From assembly GCA_002269645.1 (NCBI GenBank), contig NIVC01005049.1:1-27802 (forward strand): a DNA stretch of 27,802 nucleotides. The letters are read 5' to 3'. Shown here in pieces: positions 591 through 26,972 of the stretch (positions within the stretch are counted from its first letter, which is position 1; each line of letters begins with the position of its first letter). The DNA comes from Macrostomum lignano. Taxonomy: Eukaryota. The notes under the pieces were generated by a model that was given only the letters and a program-made list of their open reading frames with translations, did no database searches and had not been told where the DNA came from. Position numbers and translations under genes: made by a program.

Positions 591-1831
591 CTGTCTCCCC
601 GCTTATCTCCTGTCTCCCTCTCTGGTCTCCTGTCTCCCTCTCTTGTCCCCTGTCTCCCTCTCTTGTCCCCTGTCTCCCTCTCTTGTCCCCTGTCTCCCTC
701 TCTTGTCCCCTGTCTCCCTCTCTTGTCCCCTGTCTTCCTCTCTTGTCCCATGTCTCCCTCTCTTGTCCCCTGCCTCCCTCTCTTGTCCCCTGTCTCCCTC
801 TCTTGTCCCCTGTCTCCCTCTCTTGTCCCCTGTCTCCCTCTCTTGTCTCCTGTCTCCCTCTCTTGTCCCCTGTCTCCCTCTCTTGTCCCCTGTCTCCCTC
901 TCTTGTCCCCTGTCTCCCTCTCTTGTCTCCTGTCTCCCTCTCTTGTCTCCTGTCTCCCTCTCTTGTCCCTGTCTCCCTCTCTTGTCCCTGTCTCCCTCTC
1001 TTGTCCCCTGTCTCCCTCTCTTGTCCCCTGTCTTCCTCTCTTGTCCCATGTCTCCCTCTCTTGTCCCTGTCTCCCTCTCTTGTCCCCTGTCTCCCTCTCT
1101 TGTCCCCTGTCTCCCTCTCTTGTCCCCTGTCTCCCTCTCTTGTCTCCTGTCTCCCTCTCTTGTCCCTGTCTCCCTCTCTTGTCCCCTGTCTCCCTCTCTT
1201 GTCCCCTGTCTCCCTCTCTTGTCTCCTGTCTCCCTCTCTTGTCCCTGTCTCCCTCTCTTGTCCCCTGTCTCCCTCTCTTGTCCCTGTCTCCCTCTCTTGT
1301 CTCCTGTCTCCCTCTCTTGTCCCTGTCTTCCTCTCTTGTCCCCTGTCTCCCTCTCCTGTCCCCTGTCTCCCTCTCTTGTCCCCTGTCTTCCTCTCTTGTC
1401 CCATGTCTCCCTCTCTTGTCCCCTGCCTCCCTCTCTTGTCCCCTGTCTCCCTCTCTTGTCCCCTGTCTCCCTCTCTTGTCCCCTGTCTCCCTCTCTTGTC
1501 TCCTGTCTCCCTCTCTTGTCTCCTGCCTTGCTCTCTTGTCTCCTGTCTCCCTCTCTTGTCCCCTGTCTCCCTCTCTTGTCCCCTGTCTCCCTCTCTTGTC
1601 TCCTGTCTCCCTCTCTTGTCTCCTGCCTTGCTCTCTTGTCTCCTGTCTCCCTCTCTTGTCTCCTGCCTTGCTCTCTTGTCCCAGCCTTCCTCTCTTGTCT
1701 CCTGTCTCCATTTCTTATCTCCTGTCTCCCTCACTAGTCTCCTGCCTTCCTCTGGTCTTCTGCCTCCATCTCTTGTCCCCTGTCTCCCTCTCTTATCTCA
1801 TGTCTCCCTCTCTTGTCTCCTCCTCCCTCTC
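591..1831. repeat. 20-bp pyrimidine-rich minisatellite (TGTCTCCCTCTCTTGTCCCC)n, ~60 copies, with 19-bp variants
   Basis: Unit read directly; nearly A-free on + strand; degenerate edges; source of all ORFs between 521 and 1936. Confidence 0.97.
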
Positions 1832-3781: not shown

Positions 3782-4998
3782 GAGGTATCTACTGTCTCAT
3801 CTTAGGTGGTAGCTACTGTCTCTCAGATGGTAGCTACTGTCTCTTAGATGGTAGCTACATAATCTACTGTCTCTCAGATGGTAGCTACTGTCTCTTAGGT
3901 GGCATCTACTGTCTCTCAGATGGTATCTACATAATCTACTGTCTCTCAGATGGTAGCTACTGTCTCTTAGGTGGCATCTACACTCTACAGTCTCTCAGAT
4001 GGTATCTACAGTCTCAGGTGGTATCTACTGTCTCTCAGGTGGTATCTACTGTTTCTCAGGTGGTATCTACTGTCTCTCAGGTGGTATCTACTGTCTCTCA
4101 GGTGGTATCTACAGTCTCTCAGGTGGTATCTACTGTCTCTCAGGTGGTATCTACTGTCTCTCAGGTGGTATCTACAGTCTCTCAGGTGGTATCTACTGTC
4201 TCTTAGGTGGCATCTACACTCTACAGTCTCTCAGGTGGTATCTACAGTCTCAGGTGGTATCTACTGTCTCAGGTGGTATCTACTGTCTCTCAGGTGGAAT
4301 CTACTGTCTCTTAGGTGGCATCTACACTCTACAGTCTCTCAGGTGGTATCTAAAGTCTCAGGTGGTATCTACTGTCTCTCAGGTGGTATCTACTGTTTCT
4401 CAGGTGGTATCTACTGTCTCTTCAGGTGGTATCTACAGTCTCTCAGGTGGTATCTACAGTCTCTCAGGTGGTATCTACTGTCTCTTAGGTGGCATCTACA
4501 CTCTACAGTCTCTCAGATGGTATCTACAGTCTCAGGTGGTATCTACTGTCTCTCAGGTGGTATCTACTGTTTCTCAGGTGGTATCTACTGTCTCTCAGGT
4601 GGTATCTACTGTCTCTCAGGTGGTATCTACAGTCTCTCAGGTGGTATCTACTGTCTCTCAGGTGGTATCTACTGTCTCTCAGGTGGTATCTACAGTCTCT
4701 CAGGTGGTATCTACTGTCTCTTAGGTGGCATCTACACTCTACAGTCTCTCAGGTGGTATCTACAGTCTCAGGTGGTATCTACTGTCTCAGGTGGTATCTA
4801 CTGTCTCTCAGGTGGAATCTACTGTCTCTTAGGTGGCATCTACACTCTACAGTCTCTCAGGTGGTATCTACAGTCTCAGGTGGTATCTACTGTCTCAGTT
4901 GGTATCTACTGTCTCTCAGGTGGTATCTACTGTCTCTCAGGTGGTATCTACTGTCTCAGGTGGTATCTACTCTCTCAGGTGGTATCTTTTGTCTCAAG
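3782..4998. repeat. 21-bp minisatellite (GGTGGTATCTACTGTCTCTCA)n with shorter and longer variants, inside intron 1 (3627-5236)
   Basis: Unit read directly; 3961-4350 recurs at 4479-4868. Confidence 0.97.
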
Positions 4999-5236
4999 TA
5001 TCAAATCTAGGACCTAGGTTACAGGCTAATTAAGATAATGCTCTAATTTCCTTTACTTATCTTAAAATTATAATTCGATTTTATAATCTGTACAAAAATC
5101 CAAAGACCTGGGCTTGCTTTTAATTTACATGCTTAAACAACCTTAAATGAAATCTTAAATTAAATCCCATTAATTGAATATCAACATACTCAATAGTTCA
5201 CCTGACGCATCTCTTCCCTGCTGGAAATGCTTCCAG

Positions 5237-5598
5237 GCGTCGGCAGATCCACAGTCCAGCAGACAGTCTGCTAAGTCGGCCAGGCCAATTAGGCCAAAGC
5301 AGAGGCGCTTTCAGAGGCCTACTAAGCCCATTGCTAATCCTTCTATCGATGTGCATCGCTCGCTGTCTGTTAGAGTCCCATCTAAGATACGGCCCTCTGG
5401 CTGGAAATCCTCTTAGCTGCCTGGCTGTTGGAGGCGGTCCAGCCTGCATTGCCGGCCTGGTCTGCGTTGCTTTTGCCGCTCTGAATGCGTCTGCTTTTGC
5501 CGCTTCTTCTGGCTATCGGAGGCTCGGAGTGGCCAGCAGTGCCTGTCTGCTTCTGGTGGCTCCCGCTTGCATTGTGCTGTGGTCTAGGCCTTCGCCCA
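5237..5598 (+). CDS. DGAT1: DGAT1-like exon 2
   Basis: ttccag|G ... CCC A|gtgagt; GRRQIHSPADSLLS..FRGLLSPLLILLSMCIARCLLESHLRYG resembles DGAT1 [37 protein letters not shown]. Confidence 0.85.
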
Positions 5599-5808
5599 GT
5601 GAGTATTTCCTATTATCTTTAAACTTGGGTTGAGTAGTGTGTTATGAGCAGCCTTGAATACCTTGATTTAAAGCTTTTTTGAAATACTTCTCTGTACCCT
5701 TAAAACCCTGGTGTGTTAATGTACCCCATATAAAACCCAGGTGTGTTAATGCACTCCATAAACTCAGGTGTAATATAACCCTCCGTCTCGCTATTCCCGC
5801 TTCAACAG

Positions 5809-6197
5809 TTGTCGGCTTCGCAGGAATATCAATCAGTGTGGCTCTGTTCCTCAAGCTGACCAATTTGCACCTGCAGCGTCAGCGCATTGCTAGGCAACTC
5901 GTTGAACTTCGGGTTGTCAGTGTCAACAGAATGCTACTAATTAGCTTTGCTCAACTAGCAGGACTATTAGTTGCTATAGTGGCTCTGACTCAACAGTGGT
6001 TAATGCCTTCTCTAGCTGCCGCCTCATCTGATCCAGCTGCTAATAGCTACGAGTACAATGCGCCCTGCTGGCTGGTGATGGTTGAGAGGCAACTGCGCCT
6101 GTCGCCTCCTGTTATTGCCGTCTGCTTGGCTGCAGGAGCGGCAATGGATCGGATTCTGAAACTGATGGATTGCTGCTTTCAGTCTGGCAGTGACTTT
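5809..6197 (+). CDS. DGAT1: DGAT1-like exon 3
   Basis: caacag|TT (phase 1, A+TT=Ile) ... GAC TTT|gtaagt; VALFLKL, LTQQWLMPSL and VERQLRLSPP resemble DGAT1 TILFLKL, LIQQWMVPTI and IERLLKLAVP. Confidence 0.85.
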
Positions 6198-6489
6198 GTA
6201 AGTGCTATTTCTTTATTTTTAGCTTTTCATTGTTCGTTTCTAAGTTTAGTGTAAGCTTTTAAGATTTTTAGGAATCACCCTTTGAAGTTATTTAGGAATC
6301 GCCCTTTGAAGTTATTTAGGAATCGTCTTTAAAAGTTGCTTGGGAAATGCCTTTCCATGCCAATCATTGTAACGCAAGAATTCCACAAAAAGAAACATAA
6401 GAAATCATTTTTCACCAAAAAAATATTTTCAGCAGCAGAAACCCTCAGCTGAGGACACTACTATCAGTAGCAAACTAACTCAAACCAAG

Positions 6490-6783
6490 CGACTCTGGTG
6501 GAATGCTTCAAGCCTGACCAACCTGCTGAAGTCTGTGTGGCCATCCGCAGCGGAATTCAATCTGCCTAGTCTAGCCTGGGCTCTCCTGGCCCAGCTGGTT
6601 GTGTCCGCAGTGCTTCGATCGCCCCAGCCGTGGCCTCTGCTCACTGTGGCCATCGTGCTGCCCATTCTGGATGCCGCCTGCGTCAGATTCGGCAACAATG
6701 CCTTCGTTTGGCTCTGCCTTGTGCTTGGCCTGCCAGTGCTAGCTAGACTGGGCTATGCTGACTACTGTCAGTACTATCTTTGA
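6490..6783 (+). CDS. DGAT1: DGAT1-like exon 4 (terminal)
   Basis: ctaac branch-like motif and aag|CGA acceptor (phase 0); joins to give DF|RLWWN (degenerate FYxDWWN); FGNNAFVWLCLVLGLPV..YADY resembles YGNAAVWLSLIIGQPI..VHDY; TGA 6781-6783. The AAG acceptor is the weakest site in the model. Confidence 0.8.
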   Translation, partial: RLWWNASSLTNLLKSVWPSAAEFNLPSLAWALLAQLVVSAVLRSPQPWPLLTVAIVLPILDAACVRFGNNAFVWLCLVLGLPVLARLGYADYCQYYL

Positions 6784-6889
6784 CATTAAACTGACGTTTT
6801 CTGTGTAGATATTTGCAACGATTGACATTATATTAGCAATATAATTTTCTGTTGTTAACTCTTTAATTTTTGTTGATTAAAATTCTATA

Positions 6890-6917
6890 AATAAACAATT
6901 CTGTTGGGGGCAATAAA
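6890..6917 (+). terminator. Two AATAAA polyadenylation signals of the DGAT1-like gene (6890-6895, 6912-6917), followed by a T-rich tract
   Basis: Canonical hexamers ~110-130 nt after the stop codon. Confidence 0.55.
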
Positions 6918-7029
6918 CATTTATTTTGTTTTCCTATCCATATAGACTTTCTGTATACTTTTTTGTACTATTATTATGTCTTGGATTCTAAAATGAAAGT
7001 CCATGTTAGATTTCAGGAGAGAATAGATT

Positions 7030-8570
7030 TGAGGGAGATTGAGTGAGTCTAGAGATGACTGTGATTAGGGAAGGTAATAGAAATGAATTGAGACTGAGTT
7101 GGAGATTAGAAATGGCTGGGATTCTGAGAGAATTGAGATTAATTAAGATTAAAAGCTAGAGATGGCTGTGATTGGGGGAGAGAACAGAGTTAAATAAGAT
7201 TAAAGGGGATTAGAGATGGCTGTGATTGGGGGAGAGAACAGAGTTAAATAAGATTAAAGGGGATTAGAGATGGCTGGGATTGGGGTAGAACAGAGATAAA
7301 TGAGATTAAAGGGGATTAGAGATGGCTGGGATTGGGGTAGAACAGAGATAAATGAGATTAAAGGGGATTAGAGATGGCTGGGATTGGGGTAGAACAGAGA
7401 TAAATGAGATTAAAGGGGATTAGAGATGGCTGGGATTGGGGTAGAACAGAGATAAATGAGATTAAAGGGGATTAGAGATGGCTGGGATTGGGGTAGAACA
7501 GAGATAAATGAGATTAAAGGGGATTAGAGATGGCTGTGATTGGGGTAGAGAACAGAGATAAATGAGATTAAAGGGGATTAGAGGTGGCTGTGATTGGGGG
7601 AGAGAACAGAGATAAATGAGATTAGAGATGGCTGTGATTGGGGGAGAGAACAGAGATAAATGAGATTAAAGGGGATTAGAGATGGCTGTGGTTGGGGTAG
7701 AGAACAGAGATAAATGAGATTAAAGGGGATTAGAGATGGCTGGGATTGGGGTAGAGAACATAGCTAAATGAGATTAAAGGGGATTAGAGATGGCTGTGAT
7801 TGGGTAGAGAACAGAGATAAATGAGATTAAAGGGGATTAGAGATGGCTGGGATTGGGGTAGAGAACAGAGATAAATGAGATTAAAGGGGATTAGAGATGG
7901 CTGTGATTGGGGTAGAGAACAGAGATAAATGAGATTAAAGGGGATTAGAGATGGCTGTGGTTGGGGTAGAGAACAGAGATAAATGAGATTAAAGGGGATT
8001 AGAGATGGCTGTGGTTGGGGTAGAGAACAGAGATAAATGAGATTGAGGGGGATTAGAGATGGCTGTGATTGGGGTAGAGAACAGAGATAAATGAGATTAA
8101 AGGGGATTAGAGATGGCTGTGGTTGGGGTAGAGAACAGAGATAAATGAGATTAAAGGGGATTAGAGGTGGCTGTGATTGGGGGAGAGAACAGAGATAAAT
8201 GAGATTAGAGATGGCTGTGATTGGGGAGAGAACAGAGATAAATGGGATTGAGGGGGATTAGAGATGGCTGTGATTGGGGCAGAGAACAGAGATAAATGGG
8301 ATTGAGGGGGATTAGAGATGGCTGTGATTGGGGGAGAGAACAGAGATATATGAGATTGAGGGGGATTAGAGATGGCTGTGGTTGGGGGAGAGAACAGAGA
8401 TAAATGGGATTGAGGGGGATTAGAGATGGCTGTGATTGGGGCAGAGAACAGAGATAAATGGGATTGAGGGGGATTAGAGATGGCTGTGATTGGGGGAGAG
8501 AACAGATAAATGAGATTAAGGGGGTTTAGAGATGGCAGGGATTTTTTAGAGAGAATAGAGATGATTAGGG
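7030..8570. repeat. 54-bp purine-rich minisatellite (GAGATGGCTGTGATTGGGGTAGAGAACAGAGATAAATGAGATTAAAGGGGATTA)n, ~28 copies, with 52- and 42-bp variants
   Basis: Unit read directly; variants cluster by position; ends ~70 nt before the SIRT6 acceptor. Confidence 0.97.
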
Positions 8571-8616
8571 TCCATAACGTTATAGAAAAACAGTCGGTAC
8601 GGCAACACACCAACAG

Positions 8617-8641
8617 CTCATCTCCTTCCTCCCACCTCCAG
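8617..8641 (+). promoter_or_regulatory. 3' splice acceptor (probable SL trans-splice site) directly preceding SIRT6 codon 2
   Basis: ctcat branch-like motif + ctccttcctcccacctccag|TCG GCT AAC TAC; no ATG|GT donor between 6783 and 8641. Confidence 0.75.
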
Positions 8642-10012
8642 TCGGCTAACTACTCGGCCGGGCTGTCCGAATACTCGGACAAAGGCACTCTGGGCCTGCC
8701 CGAAACTCACGAGTCCCAAGCCGATTGGGAGTTGAAAGCTCGTCAGCTGGTGGACCTGATTCGACAGCCCGGAGCTCGAGTCGTTGTCCACACGGGAGCC
8801 GGCGTCAGCACCTCGGCCGGAATCCCGGATTTCCGCGGCCCCAACGGCGTCTGGACTCTAGAACGCGAAGGTCGAACAGTTGAAGCCGGGGCCAAGTTTG
8901 AAGAGGCTCAGCCAACACTTACTCACGCCGCTCTGGTTGCCTTGGAAACGGCCGGATTCGTTCACTACCTGGTGACGCAGAATGTTGACGGTTTGCACCT
9001 TCGGTCTGGATTTCCTCGCAATCGGTTGTCGATTTTGCATGGCGATATGTTTGTTGAGCGGTGCGCCCGGTGCGGCTTGCACCGGGCGAGAGACCAACCG
9101 GTGGAGACGGTCGGTCAGAAAGCCACCGGGAGGCGGTGCGGAGCTCCGGCTAGGCGAGGCAGAAAGAAATCCGTCAAAGCCGGTGGCGATGCTGGTGACA
9201 GTGTTGACGGCATCTGCGGCGGCCAGATGCTGGACACGGTGCTAGACTGGGAGCATCAGCTGCCTCAGGTAGATCTTCGTCGAGCTCGCGAGCATTCCAG
9301 TCGGGCTACCGTTAATCTGACTCTGGGCACCAGTTTGCAGATTGTTCCGGCCGCCGATCTGCCCACAATGGGCGGCAAATTAGTCATTATTAATCTGCAG
9401 CCTACAAAGAAAGATGCTCAGAGTTATCTGCGTATAAATGCTCGTTGCGATCTTGTCATGGCGTTGGTCTGTAGAGAACTGCTCGGCATTGATGCCGAAG
9501 AGATGCTGAGGCCGTTGCTTCGCCTGCAACCGTTGAGACTGTTTTCTAAGCATACGCGAAAGAGTGAACGGTTTCCATGGCGATTCGCCGAGTCTGATCA
9601 GAATCAAAAAATCGATAGAGAAGCTCAAAAAGAAGCTAAATGCGAGATTCCAAGTACAGAACGCACTTTGGAAAGTTCAAAATGCACTTCGGAAAGTGCA
9701 CATTGTACTTCGAAAAGTACAGAACGCACTTTGGAACGCATTTCTGAAAGTACAGAACGCACTTTGGAAAGTTCAAAATGCACTTCGGAAAGTGCACATT
9801 GTACTTCGGAAAGTACAGAGCGCACTTTGGAACGCATTTCTGAAAGTACAGAGCGCACTTTGGAAAGTGCTCAACGCACCTCGTCGGAGAGTTCAAATCA
9901 AAGTATCAAAATCAAAGATGAAGTTGTCACCGATATGAAAAAGAAACTTGAACATTCGAGCGCAGATGAGTCTAACTCTGCCACCGCGACTAAACGTTCA
10001 AAGCTTGCTTAG
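8642..10012 (+). CDS. SIRT6: NAD-dependent deacylase sirtuin-6, intronless; initiator Met not encoded in cis
   Basis: [21 protein letters not shown] matches the SIRT6 N-terminus (M)[45 protein letters not shown], catalytic LHG, four Zn Cys, LGTSLQI and INLQPT present; basic C-terminus KRSKLA. Confidence 0.95.
   Translation, partial: [456 protein letters not shown]
9653..9883 (+). repeat. Coding higher-order repeat in the SIRT6 tail: 96-bp period (starts 9653, 9749, 9845) built from 21-nt subunits
   Basis: [20 protein letters not shown](K/E)[11 protein letters not shown] x ~2.4; frame stays open. Confidence 0.9.
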
Positions 10013-10329: not shown

Positions 10330-10335
10330 AATAAA
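10330..10335 (+). terminator. Candidate AATAAA poly(A) signal for SIRT6
   Basis: First canonical hexamer after the stop, in AT-rich sequence. Confidence 0.4.
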
Positions 10336-10539
10336 ATGCCTACTATCCTACTTTAAGTAGCTTAAGTAGGAATAATTTGATACATTGCTACATTATTTTC
10401 ATTTTATGCCATGATATGATTTATTGCAGCTCAGTGAAACAGACTCACAACGTCGAAATCAATACAGATAGGACTCTAGGCCCCACTACCCTACATATAC
10501 AACACACAGATACATGTAGGGTACAAACATAGATACAAC

Positions 10540-12680
10540 ATACTAATATAGATACATCACATCATCTAGATACAATACAACACTACGCCATAGATACAGC
10601 ATCACCATCTAGATACAATACAACACTACGCCATAGATACAGCATCACCATCTAGATACAACACAACACTACGCCATAGATATAGCATCACCATCTAGAT
10701 ACAATACCACACTACGCCATAGATACAGCATCACCATCTAGATACAACACCACGCCATAGATACAGCATCACCATCTAGATACAATATAACATTACGCCA
10801 TAGATACAGCATCACCATCTAGATACAATATAACACTACGCCATAGATACAGCATCACCATCTAGATACAATATAACACTACGCCATAGATACAGCATCA
10901 CCATCTAGATACAACACCACGCCATAGATACAGCATCACCATCTAGATACAATATAACACCACGCCATAGATACAGCATCACCATCTAGATACAACACCA
11001 CGCCATAGATACAGCATCACCATCTAGATACAATATAACACCACGCCATAGATACAGCATCACCATCTAGATACAACACAACACTACGCCATAGATATAG
11101 CATCACCATCTAGATACAATACCACACTACGCCATAGATACAGCATCACCATCTAGATACAACACCACGCCATAGATACAGCATCACCATCTAGATACAA
11201 TATAACACTACGCCATAGATACAGCATCACCATCTAGATACAATACAACACTACGCCATAGATACAGCATCACCATCTAGATACAACACAACACTACGCC
11301 ATAGATACAGCATCACCATCTAGATACAATACCACACTACGCCATAGATACAGCATCACCATCTAGATACAACACCACGCCATAGATACAGCATCACCAT
11401 CTAGATACAATATAACACTACGCCATAGATACAGCATCACCATCTAGATACAATATAACACTACGCCATAGATACAGCATCACCATCTAGATACAATACA
11501 ACACTACGCCATAGATACAGCATCACCATCTAGATACAATATAACACTACGCCATAGATACAGCATCACCATCTAGATACAACACCACGCCATAAATACA
11601 GCATCACCATCTAGATACAATATAACACTACGCCATAGATACAGCATCACCATCTAGATACAATACAACACTACGCCATAGATACAGCATCACCATCTAG
11701 ATACAATATAACACTACGCCATAGATACAGCATCACCATCTAGATACAATACAACACTACGCCATAGATACAGCATCATCATCTAGATACAATATAACAC
11801 TACGCCATAGATACAGCATCACCATCTAGATACAACACCACGCCATAGATACAGCATCACCATCTAGATACAACACCACGCCATAGATACAGCATCACCA
11901 TCTAGATACAATACAACACCACGCCATAGATACAGCATCACCATCTAGATACAACACCACGCCATAGATACAGCATCACCATCTAGATACAACACCACGC
12001 CATAGATACAGCATCACCATCTAGATACAATATAACACTACGCCATAGATACAGCATCACCATCTAGATACAACACCACGCCATAGATACAGCATCACCA
12101 TCTAGATACAATATAACACTACGCCATAGATACAGCATCACCATCTAGATACAATACAACACTACGCCATAGATACAGCATCACCATCTAGATACAATAT
12201 AACACTACGCCATAGATACAGCATCACCATCTAGATACAATACAACACTACGCCATAGATACAGCATCATCATCTAGATACAATATAACACTACGCCATA
12301 GATACAGCATCACCATCTAGATACAACACCACGCCATAGATACAGCATCACCATCTAGATACAACACCACGCCATAGATACAGCATCACCATCTAGATAC
12401 AATACAACACCACGCCATAGATACAGCATCACCATCTAGATACAACACCACGCCATAGATACAGCATCACCATCTAGATACAATATAACACTACGCCATA
12501 GATACAGCATCACCATCTAAATACAATACCACACCATAGATACAGCATCACCATCTAGATACAACACCACACCATAGATACAGCATCACCATCTAGATAC
12601 AACACCACACTACGCCATAGATACAGCATCACCATCTAGATACAACACCACGCCATAAATACACCACCACCCCATAGATG
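10540..12680. repeat. 43/38-bp minisatellite TAGATACAGCATCACCATC+TAGATACAA(TATAACACT/CACC)ACGCCA, ~50 copies
   Basis: Unit read directly; two halves both start TAGATACA; ~491-bp block duplication near 11510-12476. Confidence 0.97.
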
Positions 12681-12853
12681 CAACACGAACCTAAAACCCT
12701 ATGCGTCACAGACTCGCAGATGTAAGAATATCGTACGTCTTAGGTACTTCTTAGGTACTCGTGCTTCTACTCTCGTCGTACAGAGCACGCCTTATTCACC
12801 TGTAACCCATCCAACCCATTATCTCATGCCAGTCAAGCAGCTCCAACAGACAA

Positions 12854-14797
12854 ATGGCATCCCCAGTCAAGAGCAGCAGCATGCTGCAGTCCATGAAGTC
12901 GCTCGGTACTAAAGCCGCAGCCGCAGCTCTTGACTGGCTAGGCTCAAACGAAGCAACCAATATTCTCAACGATTCCACGGCATCCATGGAATTCGAACTT
13001 CGCCTTGCCGAACGAGTGCTTGCCTCGATTGATTGGTCTAACTATGCTGCCAGAAGTGCCACCGTCTGGACAAAGCATCAGCGTCCGTTGCCTAGCGACG
13101 CCAAGAGTCCAGCTCGCCTAGCGGAAGCTCGTTCGGCCGGTCTGGAAGCCCTCGACTGCGGCCTGCTGCGTTTAGCGGCGCTGCGATTTTCTGAATGCAT
13201 CCGGCACGCCCAGCCAGGTAGCTCGGATCTTGCCGTGGCTTTCGCCAACCGTTCGCTGGTGTTCAAACGTCTCGGTTGCTATGCGGAAGCCATAGCCGAT
13301 GCTGAAGCGGCTCTACGGTTGCCGTATGGCGACGAGCGGGCCGGTAAGCTGACAGGTCGCATCGCTGACTGTCAGAAGAGAATGTCAGTGTCGAAATCCT
13401 CAAGTGTTTCCCAGCCAGCAGCAGCATCTCAATCGTTGTTGCGGGATTTTAATCCCCAGCTGCCGCACGCCAGCGCCAAGGTGCAGCTCGCTCTGGCAGA
13501 CGAAAGTCGCGGTCGCTGTCTTCTTACTCTTGAAGACGTCGATGTTGGAGACCTGTTGGTCTCTGAGCCGGCTTTTAGCGCCATTCTGCTGTCAAATCTT
13601 CGCGATAGTCACTGCTCAGCCTGCTTGGCACCTTGCCAACGGTTGCTGCCCTGTAGCGACTGCTCAGTTGTTGGCTTCTGCTCGGAGACTTGTCGGGATA
13701 ACGACCCGGTCCACAGGGTGGAATGCGGATGGCTGGCTGGATGGCTGGACTCGGCATTCAATGCGAGCATTGGTCGGCTCGCTTTTGCCACCGTGATCGC
13801 CGCTGGCGGTCCGGTTTCCGTTGCTCAGGCTGTTGCTAAGGCGAAGAATTTCAAAGATTTCGAATCGGTTTTCGGATCTGCTGGCGATTATCAATCGGTG
13901 CTGGCTTTGGTAGCTGGAGAACGACAGCGAGAGAGTCGCGATTTGGCTCAGCGAGTCGCCGTTGCCTGCCAGATGGCTCTGCTGCTCAGTGTTGAGTCTG
14001 AGTCAAATTCTCAGCTAGATGTAGCCGCCCCACTTGTTGCAGCACTGCTGCGCCATCTGATGCTGGTGCCGTGCAATGCTCACGATGTAACTGCATTGTC
14101 CGCTCCGCCGAGTAGGCTGACTACTAGTAGTAGTACTGACAATGGCAGTTCGGTAGATATTTCTGCCCTGACTATCAGAGACATTGGGTCGGCTGTGTAT
14201 CCTACGGCCAGTTTAATTAATCATTCTTGCGATCCGAATGTATCGCGAGTCACTTGTCCCGGTTTGAGACTGGAGATTCGAGCTCTCCGACCGATTGCTA
14301 AAGGCGAGGAGCTCCTTGACAACTACGGTTGGCATTGGGCTGTGCATCCGAAACAGCAGCGCCAAGAAAGTCTTGCAGCTCAGTATTTGTTCGACTGCGA
14401 CTGTGTTGCTTGCACCAATGAGTGGCCACTGTATGATGGCTTGTTGGCGTTGGAGCCTAGATGGATTGATGCGATTGCTAAGGACGATAAGAGCGAAGTC
14501 GAGGGTGCCGATAAAAACAATTTAGACGATGTTGCCAATTTTGTTGTCGATCCAACAATCAAAGCCGAGGTGGAATCAACTGTCGGGGTTGTAGCCGAGT
14601 TCGTGTCCTCATTCTCCACTTCCGCGCCACTCTTAGCTAACGAGCTGAACTCGCGTTTCGAGGCCCGACTGTTGTCGCTAATCCGCCTGCTGCAGCGTCG
14701 TGTCAGACGGCCGCATCGGTGGTTTAACGACGCCGAAGAGTGCGTCAAGATGGTGTGGAGCGCGCGGGGCTGCTTGGACACCGGCGGGACTGACTGA
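12854..14797 (+). CDS. SMYD4: SET and MYND domain lysine methyltransferase with N-terminal TPR-like region (SMYD4-like), intronless
   Basis: AVAFANRSLVF TPR motif; ADESRGRCL SET-N; MYND CSAC..CSDC..FCSETC..HRVEC; YPTASLINHSCDPN; LDNYG; post-SET YLFDCDCVAC; 647 aa. Confidence 0.88.
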   Translation: MASPVKSSSMLQSMKSLGTKAAAAALDWLGSNEATNILNDSTASMEFELRLAERVLASIDWSNYAARSATVWTKHQRPLPSDAKSPARLAEARSAGLEALDCGLLRLAALRFSECIRHAQPGSSDLAVAFANRSLVFKRLGCYAEAIADAEAALRLPYGDERAGKLTGRIADCQKRMSVSKSSSVSQPAAASQSLLRDFNPQLPHASAKVQLALADESRGRCLLTLEDVDVGDLLVSEPAFSAILLSNLRDSHCSACLAPCQRLLPCSDCSVVGFCSETCRDNDPVHRVECGWLAGWLDSAFNASIGRLAFATVIAAGGPVSVAQAVAKAKNFKDFESVFGSAGDYQSVLALVAGERQRESRDLAQRVAVACQMALLLSVESESNSQLDVAAPLVAALLRHLMLVPCNAHDVTALSAPPSRLTTSSSTDNGSSVDISALTIRDIGSAVYPTASLINHSCDPNVSRVTCPGLRLEIRALRPIAKGEELLDNYGWHWAVHPKQQRQESLAAQYLFDCDCVACTNEWPLYDGLLALEPRWIDAIAKDDKSEVEGADKNNLDDVANFVVDPTIKAEVESTVGVVAEFVSSFSTSAPLLANELNSRFEARLLSLIRLLQRRVRRPHRWFNDAEECVKMVWSARGCLDTGGTD

Positions 14798-15031: not shown

Positions 15032-16067
15032 ATCAATATTGTGTGCTCCGTTTTTTGGCCAGATTTTTTAATTGCATGATTCATGACTTATTAATACTTA
15101 GTTGCGAAATTTTGACACCGACAACTGATTATTCACCTTTATTACTTATTATATATTGCTACTAATATTGTACATCATTATTTATTTAGTAAGCATTTTA
15201 CCCCTGTTTTACCATCACTTTTTCAGCTTTTTCTACCTGTTATGCTACAAATATTTGGCTCCAAAAGAATTTGTGCCTTCTCTTTAATCTGGTTTAAGCA
15301 TGAATGCAAACATATCGAATTTTTTTAAAAATCACTAAGGGAGAGTTTTAGCATCAGTTGTTTTGCAAGCAGTTTTTATGGATAAATTTTACCGTGTGTA
15401 TTAATTTGTTAATTAATATTTGCTATGCTAAATAATATAAATTTTCGCAGATTGTCCCGAAGCTAACAAAAGCTTCCGAGTTGTGCAACTTGTTGGCGAA
15501 TTCATTCATTAAATTTTATTTAAAAAACTGGCAGTATGATTAAAAAATTGTGTAATTCTGTAGCTTTTCTTCAAGCTCACAGCCAGCTACTGACGGAAAT
15601 TCACTGAAGGCACAGCACTCATACACAGTTTTAAGAAAACAACCTTGATCATTTCTATGCAATCCTTGAGCCAGGCTCTTGGCAATTCTTGGCCAACAAA
15701 ACCAGCTCATTAAGTAGAATGCATGCCAGACTTTTGTTTATTTTGTGTAGGGAAAATATCCAGTTAGTCTAATTTATAAACAGGGCGTTTTTAGCAGGTT
15801 TTTAATCTTGTAAACTTGTTGTTTTTGTTGGAGAAGCACTTAGTTTTGTTTCGGCTTGCAGTCCGCTAGGGTGTTCGTTTTCATTCCTTGCGTTAGCCTA
15901 AATATAGTTGATAAGGTTGACATTATAATCAAATAAAATTCAACTTTTCGACACCTCAAACACAGAATATGGGCTGCTTAAACTTTACCAATTTTTATGG
16001 AGTTAGTTCACAGACTATAATTCGGAATATTAGTCACGTTTATGAAACCTTTTGTGATCTATTGGGG

Positions 16068-16550
16068 ATTGTGAACTATTCAAGATTGTGAACTATTCTG
16101 AATTGTGAACTATTGTATTTTTGTGAACTATTAGGGATTGTGAACTATTCGGGATTGTGAACTATTGGGGATTGTGAACTATTCGGGATTGTGAACTATT
16201 TGGGATTGTGAACTATTAGGGATGGTGAACTATTTGGGTTTGTAAACTATTGGGGATTGTCAACTATTGGGGATTGTGAACTATTGGGGATTGTGAACTA
16301 TTGGGGATTGTGAATTATTGGGGATTGTGAACTATTGGGGATTGTGAACTATTGGGGATTGTGAACTATTGGGGATTGTGAACTATTGGGGATTGTCAAC
16401 TATTGGGGATTGTGAACTATTGGGGATTGTGAACTATTCGTGATTGTGAACTATTCGTGATTGTGAACTATTGGGGATTGTGAACATTGTGGTTGTGAAC
16501 TATTGGGGATTGTGAACATTGTGGTTGTGAACTATTGAGGATTTTAAAAA
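16068..16550. repeat. 17-bp minisatellite (CTATTGGGGATTGTGAA)n, ~28 copies
   Basis: Unit read directly. Confidence 0.95.
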
Positions 16551-17039
16551 ACTTTGAGATTGTAAAACTTCGGGAATATAAAGCGCCCCACTTAGAAAAT
16601 GTTTTCAAAATTCCTACTGCAATATCCGTGTGCTATCCAGAAATGTTGCAACGCTTCTGCGGGACAATGAAGGTCGAGAATTATCTAAAATCCATCGTAT
16701 TAACCTGCTAATCAGCAGTTCAGCTACGCCCCCGTATCGTTGAGCACACAAGTTTTATAAATTATAGTATCTGTCCACATTAGTAATAGCATTAACGCCT
16801 GTATACTTTATGCGTTTTGTTTGCCTTTCTCACTGTGCTGGTGTTCAACTTGCCAGTGGCTACTAATATTCATAGTAATAATTCTTAGTGCTGGAACTTG
16901 AAAGTCTACTAACAAAAAGATACTGGGGCCACAGCACTAGGCCTATGTGTTATATGCTTAAAGTCCTGAATTGATGGCAGCTTTTATATGGCTAGTGAGC
17001 TTTCTGGCTCTGTTGGGGTGTTGGCTTCTCCTACATGAG

Positions 17040-17790
17040 TTCCTTATCTATGCATCTGCCTTCTAACTCTCACTTTCTATCCTCCCTTCATCTCTTCGGT
17101 TTCTCTCATCCCTCCCTTCATTTCCCTTTCCCTATTTCTCCCTTCATCTCTACCTTTAACCTTTCCTCTCTTCATCCCTCGTCTATCTCATTTCTCCCTC
17201 ATCTCCTCTACCAATTTCTGCCTTCATCTATCCCAATCCCTCTCCTCATCTCTCCCTTCATCTCCTTCTCTCCATATTTCTCCCTTCATCTCCCCCCTCT
17301 CCCCATCTTTCCCTTTATCTCTCCCTCTCCTTATTTCTCCCTATTTCTCCCTGCATCTTCTCTCTTCATTTCTCCCTTCATCTTCCCCTTTCCCCATTTC
17401 TTACTCCATCTCTCCCTTTATCTCTTTCTGTAACCTTTTCTCCCACCATCCCTCGTATATCTCATTTCTCCCTTCATCTCTTCCTCCCCATCTCTCCCTT
17501 CATCTCTCCCTCCCTATTTCCACCATCTCCTCTCCCCATCTCTCCCTTCATCTCTCCCTCCCTATTTCCACCATCTCCTCTCCCCATTTCTCCCTTCATC
17601 TCTCCCTCTCCTCATTTCTCCCTATTTCTCCCTGCATCTTCCCCTTTTCCCATTTCTTACTTCATCTCTCCCTTCATCTCTTTCTGTAACCTTTTCTCCC
17701 ATCATCCCTTGTCTATCTCATTTCTCCCTTCATCTCTTCCTCCCCATTTCTCCCTTCAGCTCCCCATCCTCCATTTCTCCCTTAATCTTT
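17040..17790. repeat. Degenerate polypyrimidine repeat (TCTCCCTTCATCTC-like) with an internal ~256-bp offset duplication
   Basis: Almost G-free C/T-rich tract; tttctgtaaccttttctccc at 17425 and 17681. Confidence 0.85.
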
Positions 17791-17914: not shown

Positions 17915-18289
17915 TCGGCCTCAAACTGCAGTCCCAAGCCTCGCCAGCTGCTGCTGATCTCCGGCAAGCGCAAATCCGGCAAAGATCACGTGACCTCTCG
18001 AATATTAGCCGCCGCGGCTGAGCGCAACTTTCCTGCCGCTTGTGTTCGGGTCAGCCAGCCGCTGAAGGCGGAGTACGCCAGGCTGCACAAACTCGATGCA
18101 GACCGACTGGCGGATTCCACAGAGTACAAGGAGGCCTTCAGGGCTGACATGATCGCCTGGGGTGAGCGGCTGCGAGCTGCCGATCCTGGCTGCTTCTGCC
18201 GGCTGGCGGTGCAGATGGCGCAACCGCCTGCTGACGGGCTCTGGGTGGTGTCAGATGTACGCAGGCCTACCGATATCCAATACTTTCTG
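17915..18289 (+). CDS. PMVK: Phosphomevalonate kinase (animal type), coding exon 1; initiator Met not encoded in cis
   Basis: [16 protein letters not shown] P-loop, YKEAFRADMIAWGE, ADPGCFCR, WVVSDVRRPTDIQYF; donor CTG|gtgagg, phase 0. Confidence 0.93.
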
Positions 18290-18384
18290 GTGAGGGTATT
18301 GTCCTGACTGACTGTTTTTGAGTGTGTCTACGGTTTCTAGGGTTTGCTTTTTTCCAAAGTAGCGATTCTTTTCTTTGTAGCTAA

Positions 18385-20030
18385 TGTTATACCCGGTTGC
18401 TAGGGTTATTCCCGGTTGCTCTGGCTATTCCCGGTTGCTAGGGTCATTCTTCTAAGTTTCTACGGCTATTCCCGGTTGCTAGGGTTATTCCCGGTTTCTA
18501 TGGCTATTTACGGTTGCTAGGGTCATTCTTCTAAGTTTCTACGGCTATTCCCGGTTGCTAGGGTTATTCCCGGTTGCTATGGCTATTTACGGTTGCTAGG
18601 GTCATTCTTCTAAGTTTCTACGGCTATTCCCGGTTGCTAGGGTTATTCCCGGTTGCTAGGGTTATACCCGGTTGCTAGGGTTATTCCCGGTTGCTCTGGC
18701 TATTCCCGGTTGCTAGGGTCATTCTTCTAAGTTTCTACGGCTATTCCCGGTTGCTAGGGTTATTCCCGGCTTCTATGGCTATTTACGGTTGCTAGGGTCA
18801 TTCTTCTAAGTTTCTACGGCTATTCCCGGTTGCTAGGGTTATTCCCGGTTGCTATGGCTATTCCCGGTTGCTAGGGTCATTCTTCTAAGTTTCTACGGCT
18901 ATTCCCGGTTGCTAGGGTTATTCCCGGTTTCTATGGCTATTTACGGTTGCTAGGGTCATTCTTCTAAGTTTCTACGGCTATTCCCGGTTGCTAGGGTTAT
19001 TCCCGGTTTCTATGGCTATTTACGGTTGCTAGGGTCATTCTTCTAAGTTTCTACGGCTATTCCCGGTTGCTAGGGTTATTCCCGGTTGCTATGGCTATTT
19101 ACGGTTGCTAGGGTCATTCTTCTAAGTTTCTACGGCTATTCCCGGTTGCTAGGGTTATTCCCGGTTGCTAGGGTTATACCCGGTTGCTAGGGTTATTCCC
19201 GGTTGCTCTGGCTATTCCCGGTTGCTAGGGTCATTCTTCTAAGTTTCTACGGCTATTCCCGGTTGCTAGGGTTATTCCCGGCTTCTATGGCTATTTACGG
19301 TTGCTAGGGTCATTCTTCTAAGTTTCTACGGCTATTCCCGGTTGCTAGGGTTATTCCCGGTTGCTATGGCTATTCCCGGTTGCTAGGGTCATTCTTCTAA
19401 GTTTCTACGGCTATTCCCGGTTGCTAGGGTTATTCCCGGTTTCTATGGCTATTTACGGTTGCTAGGGTTATTCCCGGTTTCTATGGCTATTTACGGTTAT
19501 TGGGATTATTCCCGGTTGCTAGGGTTATTCCCGGTCTCTATGGTTATTTACGGTTGTTGGGATTATTCCCGGTTGCTAGGGTTATTCCCGGTTTCTATGG
19601 CTATTTACGGTTGTTGGGATTATTCCCGGTTGCTAGGGTTATTCCCGGTTTCTATGGCTATTTACGGTTGCTAGGGTCATTCTCGGTTGCTAAGGTTATG
19701 CTAAGGTTATTCCCGGTTGCTAGGGTTATTCCCGGTTGCTAAGGTTATTCTCGGTTGCTAGGGTTATTCCTGGTTGCTGGGTTATTCTCGGTTGCTAAGG
19801 TTATTCCTGGTTGCTGGGTTATTCACGGTTGCTAGGGTTATTCCTGGTTACTAAGGTTATTCCCGGTTGCTAGGATTATTCCCGGTTGCTAAGGTTATTC
19901 CCGGTTGCTAGGGTTACTCCCAGTTGCTAGTGTATTTCCGGTTTGCTAGGGATATTCAGGGGTTGCTAGGGTTATTCCCAGTTGTTAGGATAATTCCTAG
20001 TTTCTAAGGATATTTTGATTGCTATAAGTC
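18385..20030. repeat. 19-bp minisatellite (GGTTGCTAGGGTTATTCCC)n with a 79-bp higher-order unit (22+19+19+19) and a 512-bp tandem duplication, in the PMVK intron (18290-20100)
   Basis: Unit read directly; 18441-18952 recurs at 18953-19464. Confidence 0.97.
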
Positions 20031-20410: not shown

Positions 20411-21148
20411 AGTGAGAGTCAGGGAGAGAGAGAGGCCGGGTGAGAGTCAGATCGGTAGGGAAGGGTGAGAGTCAGGGAGAGACGAAAGGGCGAGAGTCAG
20501 GGAGAGAGAGAAGGGTGAGAGTCAGGGAGAGAGAGAAGGGTGAGAGTCAGGGAGAGACGAAAGGGCGAGAGTCAGGGAGAGAGAGAAGGGTGAGAGTCAG
20601 GGAGAGAGAAAAGGGTGAGAGTCAGGGAGAGAGAGAAGAGTGAGAGTCAGGGAGAGAGAAGGGTGAGAATCAGGGAGAGAGAGAAGGGTGAGAGACAGGG
20701 AGAGAGAGAAGGGTGAGAGTCAGCTCGGTAGGGAAGGGTGAGAGTCAGGGAGAGACTGACCCTGTGAGAGTCAGGGAGAGAGAGAAGGGTGAGAGACAGG
20801 GAGAGAGAGAAGGGTGAGAGTCAGCTCGGTAGGGAAGGGTGAGAGTCAGGGAGAGACTGACCCTGTGAGAGTCAGGGAGAGAGAGAAGGGTGAGAGTCAG
20901 GGAGAGAGAGAAGGGTGAGAGTCAGGGAGAGAGAGAAGGGTGAGAATCAGGGAGAGAGAGAGAGAAGGGTGAGAGTCAGGGAGAGAGAGAAGGGTGAGAG
21001 TCAGGTCGGTAGGGAAGAGTGAGAGTCAGGGAGAGACGAAAGGGTTAGAGTCAGGGAGAGATAGAAGGGTGAGAGTCAGGGAGAGAGAGAAGGGTGTGAG
21101 TCAGGGAGAGACGAAAGGGAGAGAGAGAAGGGTGAGAGTCAGGGAGAA
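20411..21148. repeat. 25-bp purine-rich minisatellite (GGGTGAGAGTCAGGGAGAGAGAGAA)n with 75- and 100-bp higher-order blocks
   Basis: Unit read directly; lies between the convergent PMVK and NECAB 3' ends. Confidence 0.95.
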
Positions 21149-21596: not shown

Positions 21597-21709
21597 CTGA
21601 AATTTATTCATTGCGAGGGGGTGCATGTTTGAGTGATTTATTACTTCGGAAATGTTCAGGTAGTTTTGCGAATTCTGCAGATTCCGAATTCATATGCGAT
21701 TTCAGGACA

Positions 21710-25011: not shown

Positions 25012-25690
25012 CCCACTGCAAACTCATTTATCTACCCCACAATTCACTGCAAACTCAAGCTATCTACCTCACAACTCACTGCAAACTCAAGCTATCTACC
25101 TCACACTCCACTGCAAACTCCAGCTATCTACCTCACACTCCACTGCAAACTCAAGCTATCTACCTCACACTCCACTGCAAACTCAAGCTATCTAACCCAC
25201 ACTCACTGCAAACTCAAGCTATCTACCTCACACTCCACTGCAAACTCAAGCTATCTACCTCACACTCCACTGCAAACTCAAGCTATCTACCTCACACTCC
25301 ACTGCAAACTCAAGCTATTTACCTCACACTCCACTGCAAACTCAAGCTATTTACCTCACACTCCACTGCAAACTCAAGCTATCTACCTCACACTCCACTG
25401 CAAACTCAAGCTATTTACCTCACACTCCACTGCAAACTCAAGCTATTACCTCACACTCCACTGCAAACTCAAGCTATCTACCTCACACTCCACTGCAAAC
25501 TCAAGCTATTTACCTCACACTCCACTGCAAACTCAAGCTATTTACCTCACACTCCACTGCAAACTCAAGCTATCTACCTCACACTCCACTGCAAACTCAA
25601 GCTATTACCTCACACTCCACTGCAAACTCAAGCTATCTACCTCACACTCCACTGCAAACTCAAGCTATCTACCTCACACTCCACTGCCAC
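25012..25690. repeat. 32-bp minisatellite (CACTCCACTGCAAACTCAAGCTATCTACCTCA)n, ~21 copies, in a NECAB intron
   Basis: Unit read directly; slightly shorter deletion variants. Confidence 0.96.
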
Positions 25691-26295: not shown

Positions 26296-26768
26296 CTGCG
26301 ATGAAAGGGGGAGGCTGAGGTGAGGACAAGTGCGCGGAAATGCAGCTGTAAATTTTACAGCAGGTTAAGTGAGAGGAAAGTGAATTGAATGATTTGCAAA
26401 TGTGCTCTGCCCTCTGAGATGTGGAAAGGCGTACACGTGTACGCCTGCTGTGGTTGAAAATTTCCTCTTTGACCATGCATTATCGCTTGCAAAACTAGCG
26501 ACTGTGTATGCTCTAAAGTCCCCCATCATTAGTCCCCTAAAAGTCCCTTCCCAGCTACACTTAGAGTTCTGTCTAACGCGCTCCCTCATCATCGACTCGA
26601 CGAGTTGAGAAAAAAGCCGAAATGCTCAAAGCTGGCGGTAGGAATCCATGCTGGCTGCATGCCTCTCCTCTGGCGCTAATTAGTGTAGCGGCAGTCCAAT
26701 TTTCTTATGGGCTCAAAAGCGAATGAAGTCAGGGGTGTGATGAGGGAGAGGACACGCTGGAGAGAGTT

Positions 26769-26972
26769 GACTGACTGACTGACTGACTGACTGACTGACT
26801 GACTGACTGACTGACTGACTGACTGACTGACTGACTGACTGACTGACTGACTGACTGACTGACTGACTGACTGACTGACTGACTGACTGACTGACTGACT
26901 GACTGACTGACTGACTGACTGACTGACTGACTGACTGACTGACTGACTGACTGACTGACTGACTGACTGACT
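26769..26972. repeat. Perfect (GACT)51 microsatellite
   Basis: 204 bp read directly. Confidence 0.99.

What the first reader, a model, noticed from the sequence alone, without database searches (positions are those of the whole stretch)
8617..8710. SIRT6 lacks its own start codon; the spliced leader's terminal AUG would supply Met1
Seen: the conserved N-terminus [15 protein letters not shown] begins at 8642, right after a strong pyrimidine tract and CAG, in phase 0. The position of Met1 is occupied by the acceptor, and there is no ATG|GT donor from 6783 to 8641. Upstream in-frame ATGs (8510, 8561) lie in the minisatellite. Established: flatworm spliced leaders end in AUG, which can act as initiator Met (shown in Schistosoma). 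Inference: SL-AUG+TCG gives M-S-A-N-Y, in exact register with vertebrate M-S-V-N-Y, making translation of the native protein dependent on trans-splicing.
Basis: partly seen in the sequence, partly recalled or inferred. Interest (0 to 1): 0.85.

Follow-up and report, generated by a model that had tools for sequence, protein, structure and literature searches.

The report
Flatworm SIRT6 borrows spliced-leader start codon
This SIRT6 gene of the flatworm Macrostomum lignano has no start codon of its own and almost certainly takes the AUG at the end of the trans-spliced leader; this trick has been known in flatworms since 2006 and recurs in neighbouring genes, so it is a correct but ordinary finding.

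Summary
The window is Macrostomum lignano contig NIVC01005049.1. An intronless SIRT6 ORF begins at 8642 with S-A-N-Y, and this Ser aligns with Ser2 of human SIRT6. It follows an 18/20 pyrimidine tract and CTCCAG, which matches the published M. lignano trans-splice acceptor motif [T/C]TNCAG.

- The M. lignano spliced leader (35 nt) ends in ATG.
- SL + exon reads AUG-UCG-GCU, giving M-S-A-N-Y.
- That AUG is the only one in the first 375 nt of the predicted mRNA. The next in-frame AUG is codon 136, past the NAD-binding motif.
- There is no ATG|GT donor in the 1.86 kb upstream.
- The public annotation, whose 5' ends were cut at peaks of SL-containing reads, starts a Met-less "partial" CDS exactly at 8642 in all three genomic copies.

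I could not see SL-junction reads directly.

It is not novel in kind. SL-AUG initiation was shown in Schistosoma (Cheng 2006), and S. mansoni Sirt7 uses it. Two other genes in this window (5247, and PMVK at 17915) have the same architecture. I file it as a new member of a known kind, of low to moderate interest.

The parts
8617..8641 (+). Trans-splice acceptor region: pyrimidine tract ending in CTCCAG, with AG at 8640-8641
   Evidence: 18/20 pyrimidines in 8620-8639. The hexamer matches the published M. lignano SL acceptor motif [T/C]TNCAG. It is conserved in all three genomic copies, with one C>T (pyrimidine to pyrimidine) change in L001.
8642..10012 (+). Intronless SIRT6 coding exon without a start codon (456 codons plus stop). 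The first codon TCG is Ser2 of the native protein.
   Evidence: PDB phmmer E 3.5e-78 to human SIRT6, query residue 1 = chain residue 2. Pfam SIR2 E 1.1e-20. Public gene model 8642-10012, product starts SANYS.
6784..8641 (+). Putative outron / intercistronic spacer removed by trans-splicing. It contains 56 ATGs in all frames.
   Evidence: Lies between the stop of the upstream same-strand gene (6783) and the acceptor. No ATGGT donor.
7157..8543 (+). 54-bp minisatellite (about 26 copies) filling most of the outron
   Evidence: TRF, 92% matches, score 2130
8507..8563 (+). In-frame stop (8507-8509) and the two in-frame upstream ATGs (8510-8512, 8561-8563). These are the only cis alternatives for initiation.
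   Evidence: The 44-codon extension has no homology, and no public protein starts at either ATG.
9047..9049 (+). First in-frame ATG inside the exon (codon 136), downstream of the GAGVS NAD-binding motif and next to the catalytic His
   Evidence: alignment
10330..10335 (+). AATAAA, candidate poly(A) signal of SIRT6
   Evidence: The only A[AT]TAAA within 800 nt after the stop. Inferred, not verified.
5247..6783 (+). Upstream same-strand gene (362 aa, no Pfam hit). Its public CDS also starts Met-less directly after CAG.
   Evidence: ggcag|ATCCAC. No in-frame ATG back to the stop at 5175-5177. SL-AUG would give MIHSPADS....
17915..18307 (+). First coding exon of phosphomevalonate kinase. The public CDS also starts Met-less directly after CAG.
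   Evidence: ccgcag|TCGGCC. No in-frame ATG upstream. SL-AUG gives MSASNCSPKPRQLLLISGKRKSGKD.

Best explanation
The SIRT6 pre-mRNA of Macrostomum lignano is SL trans-spliced at the acceptor CTCCAG|TCG (8641|8642). The upstream 1.86 kb is discarded as an outron. It consists of a minisatellite-filled spacer carrying 56 AUGs, possibly intercistronic after the upstream gene.

The 35-nt spliced leader ends in AUG. It is joined in phase 0 to codon 2, so the mature mRNA reads 5'-SL...UUGC-AUG-UCG-GCU-AAC-UAC and encodes M-S-A-N-Y..., a 457-residue SIRT6 with the universal metazoan N-terminus.

Translation of native SIRT6 therefore requires trans-splicing.

Shown here: the gene, the register, the acceptor, the absence of a cis start codon, the species and its SL sequence, and the annotated boundary.
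Inferred: that SL reads map here, and that ribosomes start at the SL AUG.
For: 1. Species and SL. The contig is NIVC01005049.1 of GCA_002269645.1, which is M. lignano Mlig_3_7 (protein names). The SL is CGGTCTCTTACTGCGAAGACTCAATTTATTGCATG, and 30-39% of genes are trans-spliced. The terminal ATG is noted as a start codon in Macrostomum.

2. Acceptor. CTCCAG matches [T/C]TNCAG and follows an 18/20 pyrimidine tract. Such sites occur twice in 27.8 kb.

3. Register. Ser at 8642 aligns with Ser2 of human SIRT6, and orthologues start MSxNY.

4. Annotation. The public pipeline cut transcripts at SL-read peaks and then ran TransDecoder. The resulting CDS starts at 8642 without Met in three loci. Versions that are Met-prefixed or start at 8510 or 8561 are absent from 15 billion public proteins.

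5. No cis alternative. There is no ATG|GT donor. In the predicted mRNA the SL AUG is the only AUG in the first 375 nt, the next two are out of frame, and the first in-frame one is codon 136.

6. Precedent. [quoted passage not shown] S. mansoni Sirt7 was shown by RACE to use it.

7. Local recurrence. Two further genes in the window have the same architecture.
Against: I saw no SL-exon junction read or cDNA. The row for this gene was not in the held part of the supplementary table that carries the TRANSSPLICED flag.

The frame is open for 44 codons upstream and contains two in-frame ATGs, so an N-terminally extended protein from an unspliced transcript is physically possible.

The annotated 5' boundary is not an infallible proxy for an SL site. 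The neighbouring SET gene's 'partial' CDS begins right after a genomic ATG with no AG acceptor.

The three genomic copies are about 99% identical here, so they give no evolutionary test.
Confidence: 0.85

Rival explanations
1. A non-trans-spliced mRNA is translated from genomic ATG 8561 or 8510. This would give a SIRT6 with a 27- or 44-residue N-terminal extension (MIRVHNVIEKQ... or MRLRGFRDG...).
For: The frame is open from 8510 to 8642 and both ATGs are present in all three copies. ATG 8561 has a purine at -3.
Against: The extension has no homology, and part of it is minisatellite or minisatellite remnant. 44 open codons is expected by chance at about 12%. All orthologues place Met directly before the Ser. 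Any transcript starting upstream of the repeat would carry dozens of upstream AUGs (56 in 6784-8641). The public transcript model does not extend upstream, or TransDecoder would have called the 500-aa ORF. Neither extended protein exists in public collections.
Confidence: 0.07
2. A cis-spliced upstream exon ending in ATG (5'UTR plus Met1) is joined to the acceptor at 8641|8642.
For: The acceptor is a normal 3' splice site. Cis and trans acceptors are similar in flatworms.
Against: No ATG|GT occurs anywhere in the 1858 nt back to the previous gene. The only ATG|GC sites are the 26 minisatellite copies, and the only GTRAG (7043) is not preceded by ATG. The public model is single-exon. The established rule is that an acceptor without an upstream cis donor is trans-spliced (citing Conrad 1993).
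Confidence: 0.04
3. The locus is a non-functional or N-terminally truncated copy. Either it makes no full-length protein, or it makes only a product from Met136.
For: There is no genomic start codon. The genome is highly duplicated, with three copies.
Against: The ORF is intact over 456 codons in all three copies. GAGVS, the catalytic His (LHGD) and all four Zn cysteines are conserved against human SIRT6. A product from Met136 would lack the NAD-binding half. Missing ATGs are the norm for neighbouring, clearly conserved genes such as PMVK.
Confidence: 0.03

Closest known systems
Schistosoma mansoni mRNAs that use the SL 3'-terminal AUG as initiator Met (Cheng, Cohen, Ndegwa & Davis 2006, J Biol Chem 281:733; cited)
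   Same: The flatworm SL ends in ...UUGCAUG. The acceptor is placed so that the SL AUG is in frame with an ORF that has no AUG of its own, and the SL AUG supplies Met1 of a conserved protein.
   Different: The species is a free-living macrostomorph rather than a trematode. Translation from the SL AUG has been shown experimentally in Schistosoma, not in Macrostomum, and not for this gene.
S. mansoni Sirt7 (Lancelot et al. 2013, PMC3772001)
   Same: It is a class IV sirtuin of a flatworm. RACE showed that its full-length transcript begins with the SL and that the initiating ATG is provided by the SL.
   Different: It is a different paralogue (Sirt7, not Sirt6). For SmSirt6 the same RACE study reports no SL. 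There the evidence is a cDNA; here it is a genomic sequence plus an annotation boundary.
Echinococcus granulosus SIRT6 (P0089; genomic locus L004)
   Same: It is an orthologous flatworm SIRT6 with N-terminus MSLDYASALSEY. An acceptor-like ttccag sits just upstream of codon 1.
   Different: It keeps its own genomic ATG (L004:3001), 4 nt after the AG. An SL AUG spliced there would be out of frame, so the protein does not depend on the SL for Met1.
M. lignano SL trans-spliced / operonic genes (Wudarski 2017, PMC5730564; Ustyantsev & Berezikov 2021, PMC8629364)
   Same: Same genome, same SL, same acceptor motif. Same-strand neighbours are separated by repeat-filled spacers that fall below 1 kb once repeats are subtracted (471 and 701 nt).
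   Different: Those papers do not discuss the SL AUG as an obligatory start codon, and they do not discuss SIRT6 specifically.

Membership tests
Flatworm mRNAs initiated at the SL 3'-terminal AUG | The species has an SL RNA whose exon ends in AUG immediately before the GU donor | tested here: met
   M. lignano SL is CGGTCTCTTACTGCGAAGACTCAATTTATTGCATG followed by GTAAG, taken from the literature. No SL RNA gene lies in this window (Rfam none).
Flatworm mRNAs initiated at the SL 3'-terminal AUG | A 3' splice acceptor lies directly 5' of the ORF, with no cis donor upstream | tested here: met
   CTCCAG|TCG with an 18/20 pyrimidine tract. No ATGGT, and only one GTRAG in 1858 nt.
Flatworm mRNAs initiated at the SL 3'-terminal AUG | SL-exon junction observed in RNA (reads, EST, RACE) | not testable with these tools
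   Indirect evidence only. The public CDS, from a pipeline that cuts transcripts at SL-read peaks, starts at exactly 8642 and is flagged partial. No transcript contig for this gene is in the protein collection.
Flatworm mRNAs initiated at the SL 3'-terminal AUG | The SL AUG is in frame with the conserved ORF, with no intervening stop | tested here: met
   SL + exon translates to [20 protein letters not shown]..., 457 aa.
Flatworm mRNAs initiated at the SL 3'-terminal AUG | No genomic AUG in the mature mRNA can give the full conserved protein | tested here: met
   The next AUGs, at mRNA positions 376 and 433, are out of frame. The first in-frame AUG is codon 136.
Flatworm mRNAs initiated at the SL 3'-terminal AUG | Ribosomes initiate at the SL AUG | not testable with these tools
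   This needs Ribo-seq, N-terminal proteomics or a reporter assay.
SIRT6 (class IV sirtuin) | Sir2 catalytic domain that matches SIRT6 better than other sirtuins | tested here: met
   Pfam PF02146, E 1.1e-20. Human SIRT6 scores 266 bits versus 148 bits for SIRT7. The top database hits are annotated SIRT6.
SIRT6 (class IV sirtuin) | NAD-binding GAGxS, catalytic His, and four Zn-binding Cys | tested here: met
   The alignment to 3k35 shows [24 protein letters not shown] (His aligned with human H133), and C141/C144/C166 plus the Cys in GICGG aligned with human C177.
SIRT6 (class IV sirtuin) | Conserved N-terminus M-S-x-N-Y-A/S-x-G-L-S | tested here: met
   S-A-N-Y-S-A-G-L-S is encoded from 8642. 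Only the Met is missing from the genome.
SIRT6 (class IV sirtuin) | NAD-dependent deacylase activity | not testable with these tools
   This needs an enzyme assay.
M. lignano operon (criterion of Ustyantsev & Berezikov 2021) | Adjacent same-strand genes, the downstream one trans-spliced, with a repeat-adjusted spacer under 1 kb | tested here: inconclusive
   All four genes are on the + strand. Repeat-adjusted stop-to-start spacers are 471 nt (upstream gene to SIRT6), 701 nt (SIRT6 to SET) and 2034 nt (SET to PMVK). Trans-splicing status is only inferred, and no polycistronic precursor was seen.

The most novel reading that the evidence does not exclude
In Macrostomum lignano, handing the start codon over to the spliced leader may be the rule among trans-spliced genes rather than an occasional quirk. 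In this window, three of four adjacent genes, including conserved housekeeping and chromatin enzymes, have no usable AUG of their own. If that holds genome-wide, SL trans-splicing would act as an obligatory licence for translation of a large part of the proteome. It could then serve as a global translational switch, for example in neoblasts, where trans-spliced genes are over-represented.
Probability: 0.3. Interest if true: 0.5.

Novelty: new member of a known kind. Interest (0 to 1): 0.25.

Why it matters
There are practical consequences. Gene finders and databases list this SIRT6, and many other M. lignano proteins, as 'partial' fragments, or could wrongly extend it to the minisatellite-derived ATG at 8510. 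The true protein is M + 456 residues.

Anyone expressing the gene, designing transgenes or knock-ins (M. lignano is the transgenic flatworm model), or comparing N-termini must add the SL-derived Met.

Biologically, production of an ageing and chromatin regulator depends strictly on trans-splicing, because the unspliced precursor carries 56 upstream AUGs and no correct start. This is already an established property of flatworm SLs. The value lies in correct annotation and in a possible genome-wide tally, not in a new mechanism.

Tried and rejected
1. Transcript contigs carrying the SL-exon junction. A 60-aa query (translated SL + N-terminus) against the 5.8-billion protein index returned 'no candidate shares three words'. 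This seems to be a limit of the index, since even the identical public protein was not recalled. The full-length search found no transcript-derived copy, and exact look-ups of the Met-prefixed, 8510-started and 8561-started proteins found none.

2. Supplementary tables with a TRANSSPLICED column (Grudniewska 2018). The file is truncated in the library and the SIRT6 row is not held; only the SIRT1 homologue, flagged TRANSSPLICED, was visible. The Wudarski 2017 supplements do not list the gene.

3. The 'SIRT6' qPCR primers of Mouton 2018 (Mlig005493.g1-3). They do not match this window even with 3 mismatches, so they were no help in linking the locus to a gene ID.

4. Evolutionary test of the upstream frame using the three genomic copies. 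They are about 99% identical, so the comparison is uninformative.

5. SL RNA gene or any Rfam family in the window. None was found.

6. Cheng et al. 2006 itself is not held. It is cited through three papers that summarise it.

7. Pseudogene, cis-exon and internal-initiation readings were considered and rejected on the sequence evidence given under the rival explanations.

Full report
**What is there**

The 27,802-base window is the whole of contig NIVC01005049.1 of assembly GCA_002269645.1. [quoted passage not shown] 2017). Public names of the neighbouring gene's paralogues read 'BOX15_Mlig..., partial [Macrostomum lignano]'.

From 8642 to the stop at 10010-10012 runs an uninterrupted 456-codon frame beginning [15 protein letters not shown].
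- It carries a Sir2 domain (Pfam PF02146, E 1.1e-20).
- It matches human SIRT6 far better than SIRT7 (266 versus 148 bits).
- The GAGxS NAD motif, the catalytic His and the four zinc cysteines are all conserved in the alignment.

The alignment to human SIRT6 starts at query residue 1 and chain residue 2. Ser 8642 is therefore Ser2, and the only thing missing is Met1. Of about 49 orthologues inspected, from sponges to vertebrates, virtually all begin M-S-[V/A/L/C]-[N/D]-Y. Where an ORF caller added an upstream extension, that M still sits directly before the S.

Immediately 5' of 8642 the genome reads ...CTCATCTCCTTCCTCCCACCTCCAG. The stretch 8620-8639 is 18/20 pyrimidine and the tract ends in CAG. 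The hexamer CTCCAG fits the top motif reported at M. lignano SL trans-splice acceptors, [T/C]TNCAG. That motif with at least 17/20 upstream pyrimidines occurs only twice on this strand in 27.8 kb. The other instance lies in a CT-rich satellite, so its coincidence with the exact codon boundary where homology begins is not chance.

Upstream in frame there is a stop at 8507-8509, then ATGs at 8510 and 8561. ATG 8510 lies in the last unit of a 54-bp, 26-copy minisatellite spanning 7157-8543.

Between the stop of the previous same-strand gene (6783) and 8641 there is no ATGGT at all. The 26 ATGGC are all copies of the minisatellite unit or its flank, and the single GTRAG (7043) is not preceded by ATG.

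**How it most likely works**

M. lignano has one spliced leader, CGGTCTCTTACTGCGAAGACTCAATTTATTGCATG. It is 35 nt, followed by GTAAG in the SL RNA gene, and is attached to 30-39% of genes. The terminal ATG is conserved in M. cliftonense and M. hystrix and has been noted as a translation start codon.

Joining this SL to 8642 gives ...UUGC-AUG-UCG-GCU-AAC-UAC, which encodes M-S-A-N-Y and a 457-residue protein. In that predicted mRNA:
- the SL AUG is the only AUG in the first 375 nt;
- the next two AUGs are out of frame, opening ORFs of 87 and 68 codons;
- the first in-frame AUG is codon 136, beyond the NAD-binding half of the enzyme.

The discarded upstream 1.86 kb contains 56 AUGs. An unprocessed precursor would therefore be essentially untranslatable for SIRT6.

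The strongest piece of indirect experimental evidence is the deposited annotation. Wudarski et al. trimmed the SL from SL-containing RNA-seq reads and mapped them. They cut transcripts at the resulting peaks (their TBONE pipeline) and then ran TransDecoder. The resulting public gene model is a single exon, 8642-10012, whose product starts with SANYS and has no Met. It is identical in three genomic copies: the window (returned as locus L002), L001 and L003.

Had the transcript model extended even a few dozen bases upstream, TransDecoder would have extended the open frame, or chosen the complete 500-aa ORF from 8510. Neither that protein, nor the one starting at 8561, nor a Met-prefixed version exists among about 15 billion public proteins.

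I did not see the junction reads themselves. That step remains inferred, as does initiation at the SL AUG in this species.

**Rivals**

1. Initiation at 8561 or 8510 on an unspliced transcript. This is physically possible because the frame is open. However, 44 open codons is about a 12% chance event. The extension is repeat-derived and has no homology, every orthologue puts Met next to the Ser, and the public model excludes it. I give it about 0.07.

2. A cis-spliced upstream exon ending in ATG. There is no ATG|GT donor before the previous gene. An acceptor without a cis donor is the known determinant of trans-splicing. I give it about 0.04.

3. A dead or truncated copy. This is contradicted by the intact ORF in three copies and by conserved catalytic residues. 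The same lack of an ATG is also seen in neighbouring conserved genes. I give it about 0.03.

**Comparison with what is known**

Use of the flatworm SL 3'-terminal AUG as initiator methionine was established in Schistosoma mansoni by Cheng et al. 2006. As summarised in later papers, the SL AUG is in frame in 28% of trans-spliced mRNAs, and more than 40 cDNAs need it for the correct frame. All reported flatworm SLs end in AUG.

A sister class IV sirtuin, S. mansoni Sirt7, was shown by RACE to take its initiating ATG from the SL. No SL was reported for SmSirt6 in the same study. The cestode orthologue (E. granulosus SIRT6) keeps a genomic ATG 4 nt after an acceptor-like ttccag. Loss of the genomic start is therefore lineage-specific, not ancestral to flatworm SIRT6.

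Within this very window the same architecture recurs.
- The upstream gene starts at ggcag|ATC (5247) with no in-frame ATG back to the preceding stop.
- Phosphomevalonate kinase starts at ccgcag|TCG (17915), likewise with none. There the SL AUG yields MSASNCSPKPRQLLLISGKRKSGKD, whose SGKRKSGKD motif I recall from the N-terminus of human PMVK (from memory; not aligned here).

SIRT6 is thus one instance of a common feature of this genome.

**Novelty and verdict**

The mechanism, however, is two decades old. It is documented for a related sirtuin in another flatworm, it is implicit in the public gene model, and it is shared by the neighbours. I found no paper that states it for M. lignano SIRT6, and the main M. 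lignano trans-splicing study does not discuss SL-AUG initiation. I therefore file it as a new member of a known kind, with interest about 0.25.

The most novel reading still open is that obligatory use of the SL AUG is pervasive in Macrostomum (3 of 4 genes here). That would make trans-splicing a general licence for translation. It needs a genome-wide count.

**Loose ends**

- The SET-domain gene's public 'partial' CDS begins at 12857, right after a genomic ATG and without any AG acceptor. This shows that annotated starts are not always clean SL sites.
- The upstream gene has two annotated starts among the copies. This implies a second acceptor at 5259|5260 where the SL AUG is out of frame.
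- Repeat-adjusted stop-to-start spacers of 471 and 701 nt suggest that the upstream gene, SIRT6 and SET could form an operon by the published <1 kb criterion. This was not tested.

Noticed in passing
window 5247 and 17915 (+ strand): Two other genes have public CDSs that start without Met directly after CAG, with no in-frame ATG upstream: an unnamed 362-aa protein and phosphomevalonate kinase. Both would also need the SL AUG, giving MIHSPADS... and MSASNCSPKPRQLLLISGKRKSGKD...
   Followed up: partly
window 12833-12857: The public 'partial' CDS of the SET-domain gene starts at 12857, immediately after a genomic ATG (12854-12856), with no AG acceptor at any compatible junction. A canonical in-frame acceptor, tgccag|TCAAGC, lies at 12832|12833. 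The cause could be an annotation artefact, multi-mapped SL reads or a non-canonical site; it is unexplained.
   Followed up: partly
window 5247-5262; L001 6550-6565: Gene models of the upstream gene differ between copies by 15 nt although the sequence is identical. This implies two alternative SL acceptors: ggcag|ATC, where the SL AUG is in frame, and tccag|CAG, where the SL AUG is out of frame and gives MQTVC*.
   Followed up: partly
window 7157-8543, 10529-12671, 16052-16567, 17217-17783: Every spacer between the four same-strand genes is largely filled by a different minisatellite. After subtracting them, the spacers are 471, 701 and 2034 nt. By the published <1 kb criterion the first three genes might form one SL-resolved operon.
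   Followed up: partly
window 9652-9868: A 96-bp tandem repeat (2.3 copies, 97% matches) lies inside the SIRT6 coding region. It encodes a repeated STERTLE(S/R)...SESAHCTS tail in the non-conserved C-terminal extension.
   Followed up: no
window about 9167-9211: There is a roughly 15-residue insertion ([15 protein letters not shown]) in the zinc-binding module of SIRT6 relative to the human enzyme, between the third and fourth zinc cysteines.
   Followed up: no
whole window (searched), Mouton et al. 2018 supplement: The published M. lignano 'SIRT6' qPCR primers (genes Mlig005493.g1-3) do not match this locus even with 3 mismatches. The genome may hold a second SIRT6-like gene, or that assay may target something else.
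   Followed up: partly
L004 2990-3003 (Echinococcus granulosus SIRT6): The cestode orthologue has its own ATG 4 nt after an acceptor-like cattccag. An SL spliced there would put the SL AUG out of frame, as a short overlapping upstream ORF.
   Followed up: no
window 591-1831, 3784-4995, 18386-20014, 20412-21138, 21709-23422, 25013-25687, 26768-26972: Minisatellite load is very high, with strongly strand-skewed composition. It includes a perfect (TGAC)51 microsatellite at 26768-26972. This is typical of this repeat-rich genome.
   Followed up: no
L001 about 9977 (equivalent to window 8619): The only substitution among the three copies in the 130 nt before the acceptor is C>T inside the pyrimidine tract, so the pyrimidine is preserved.
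   Followed up: no
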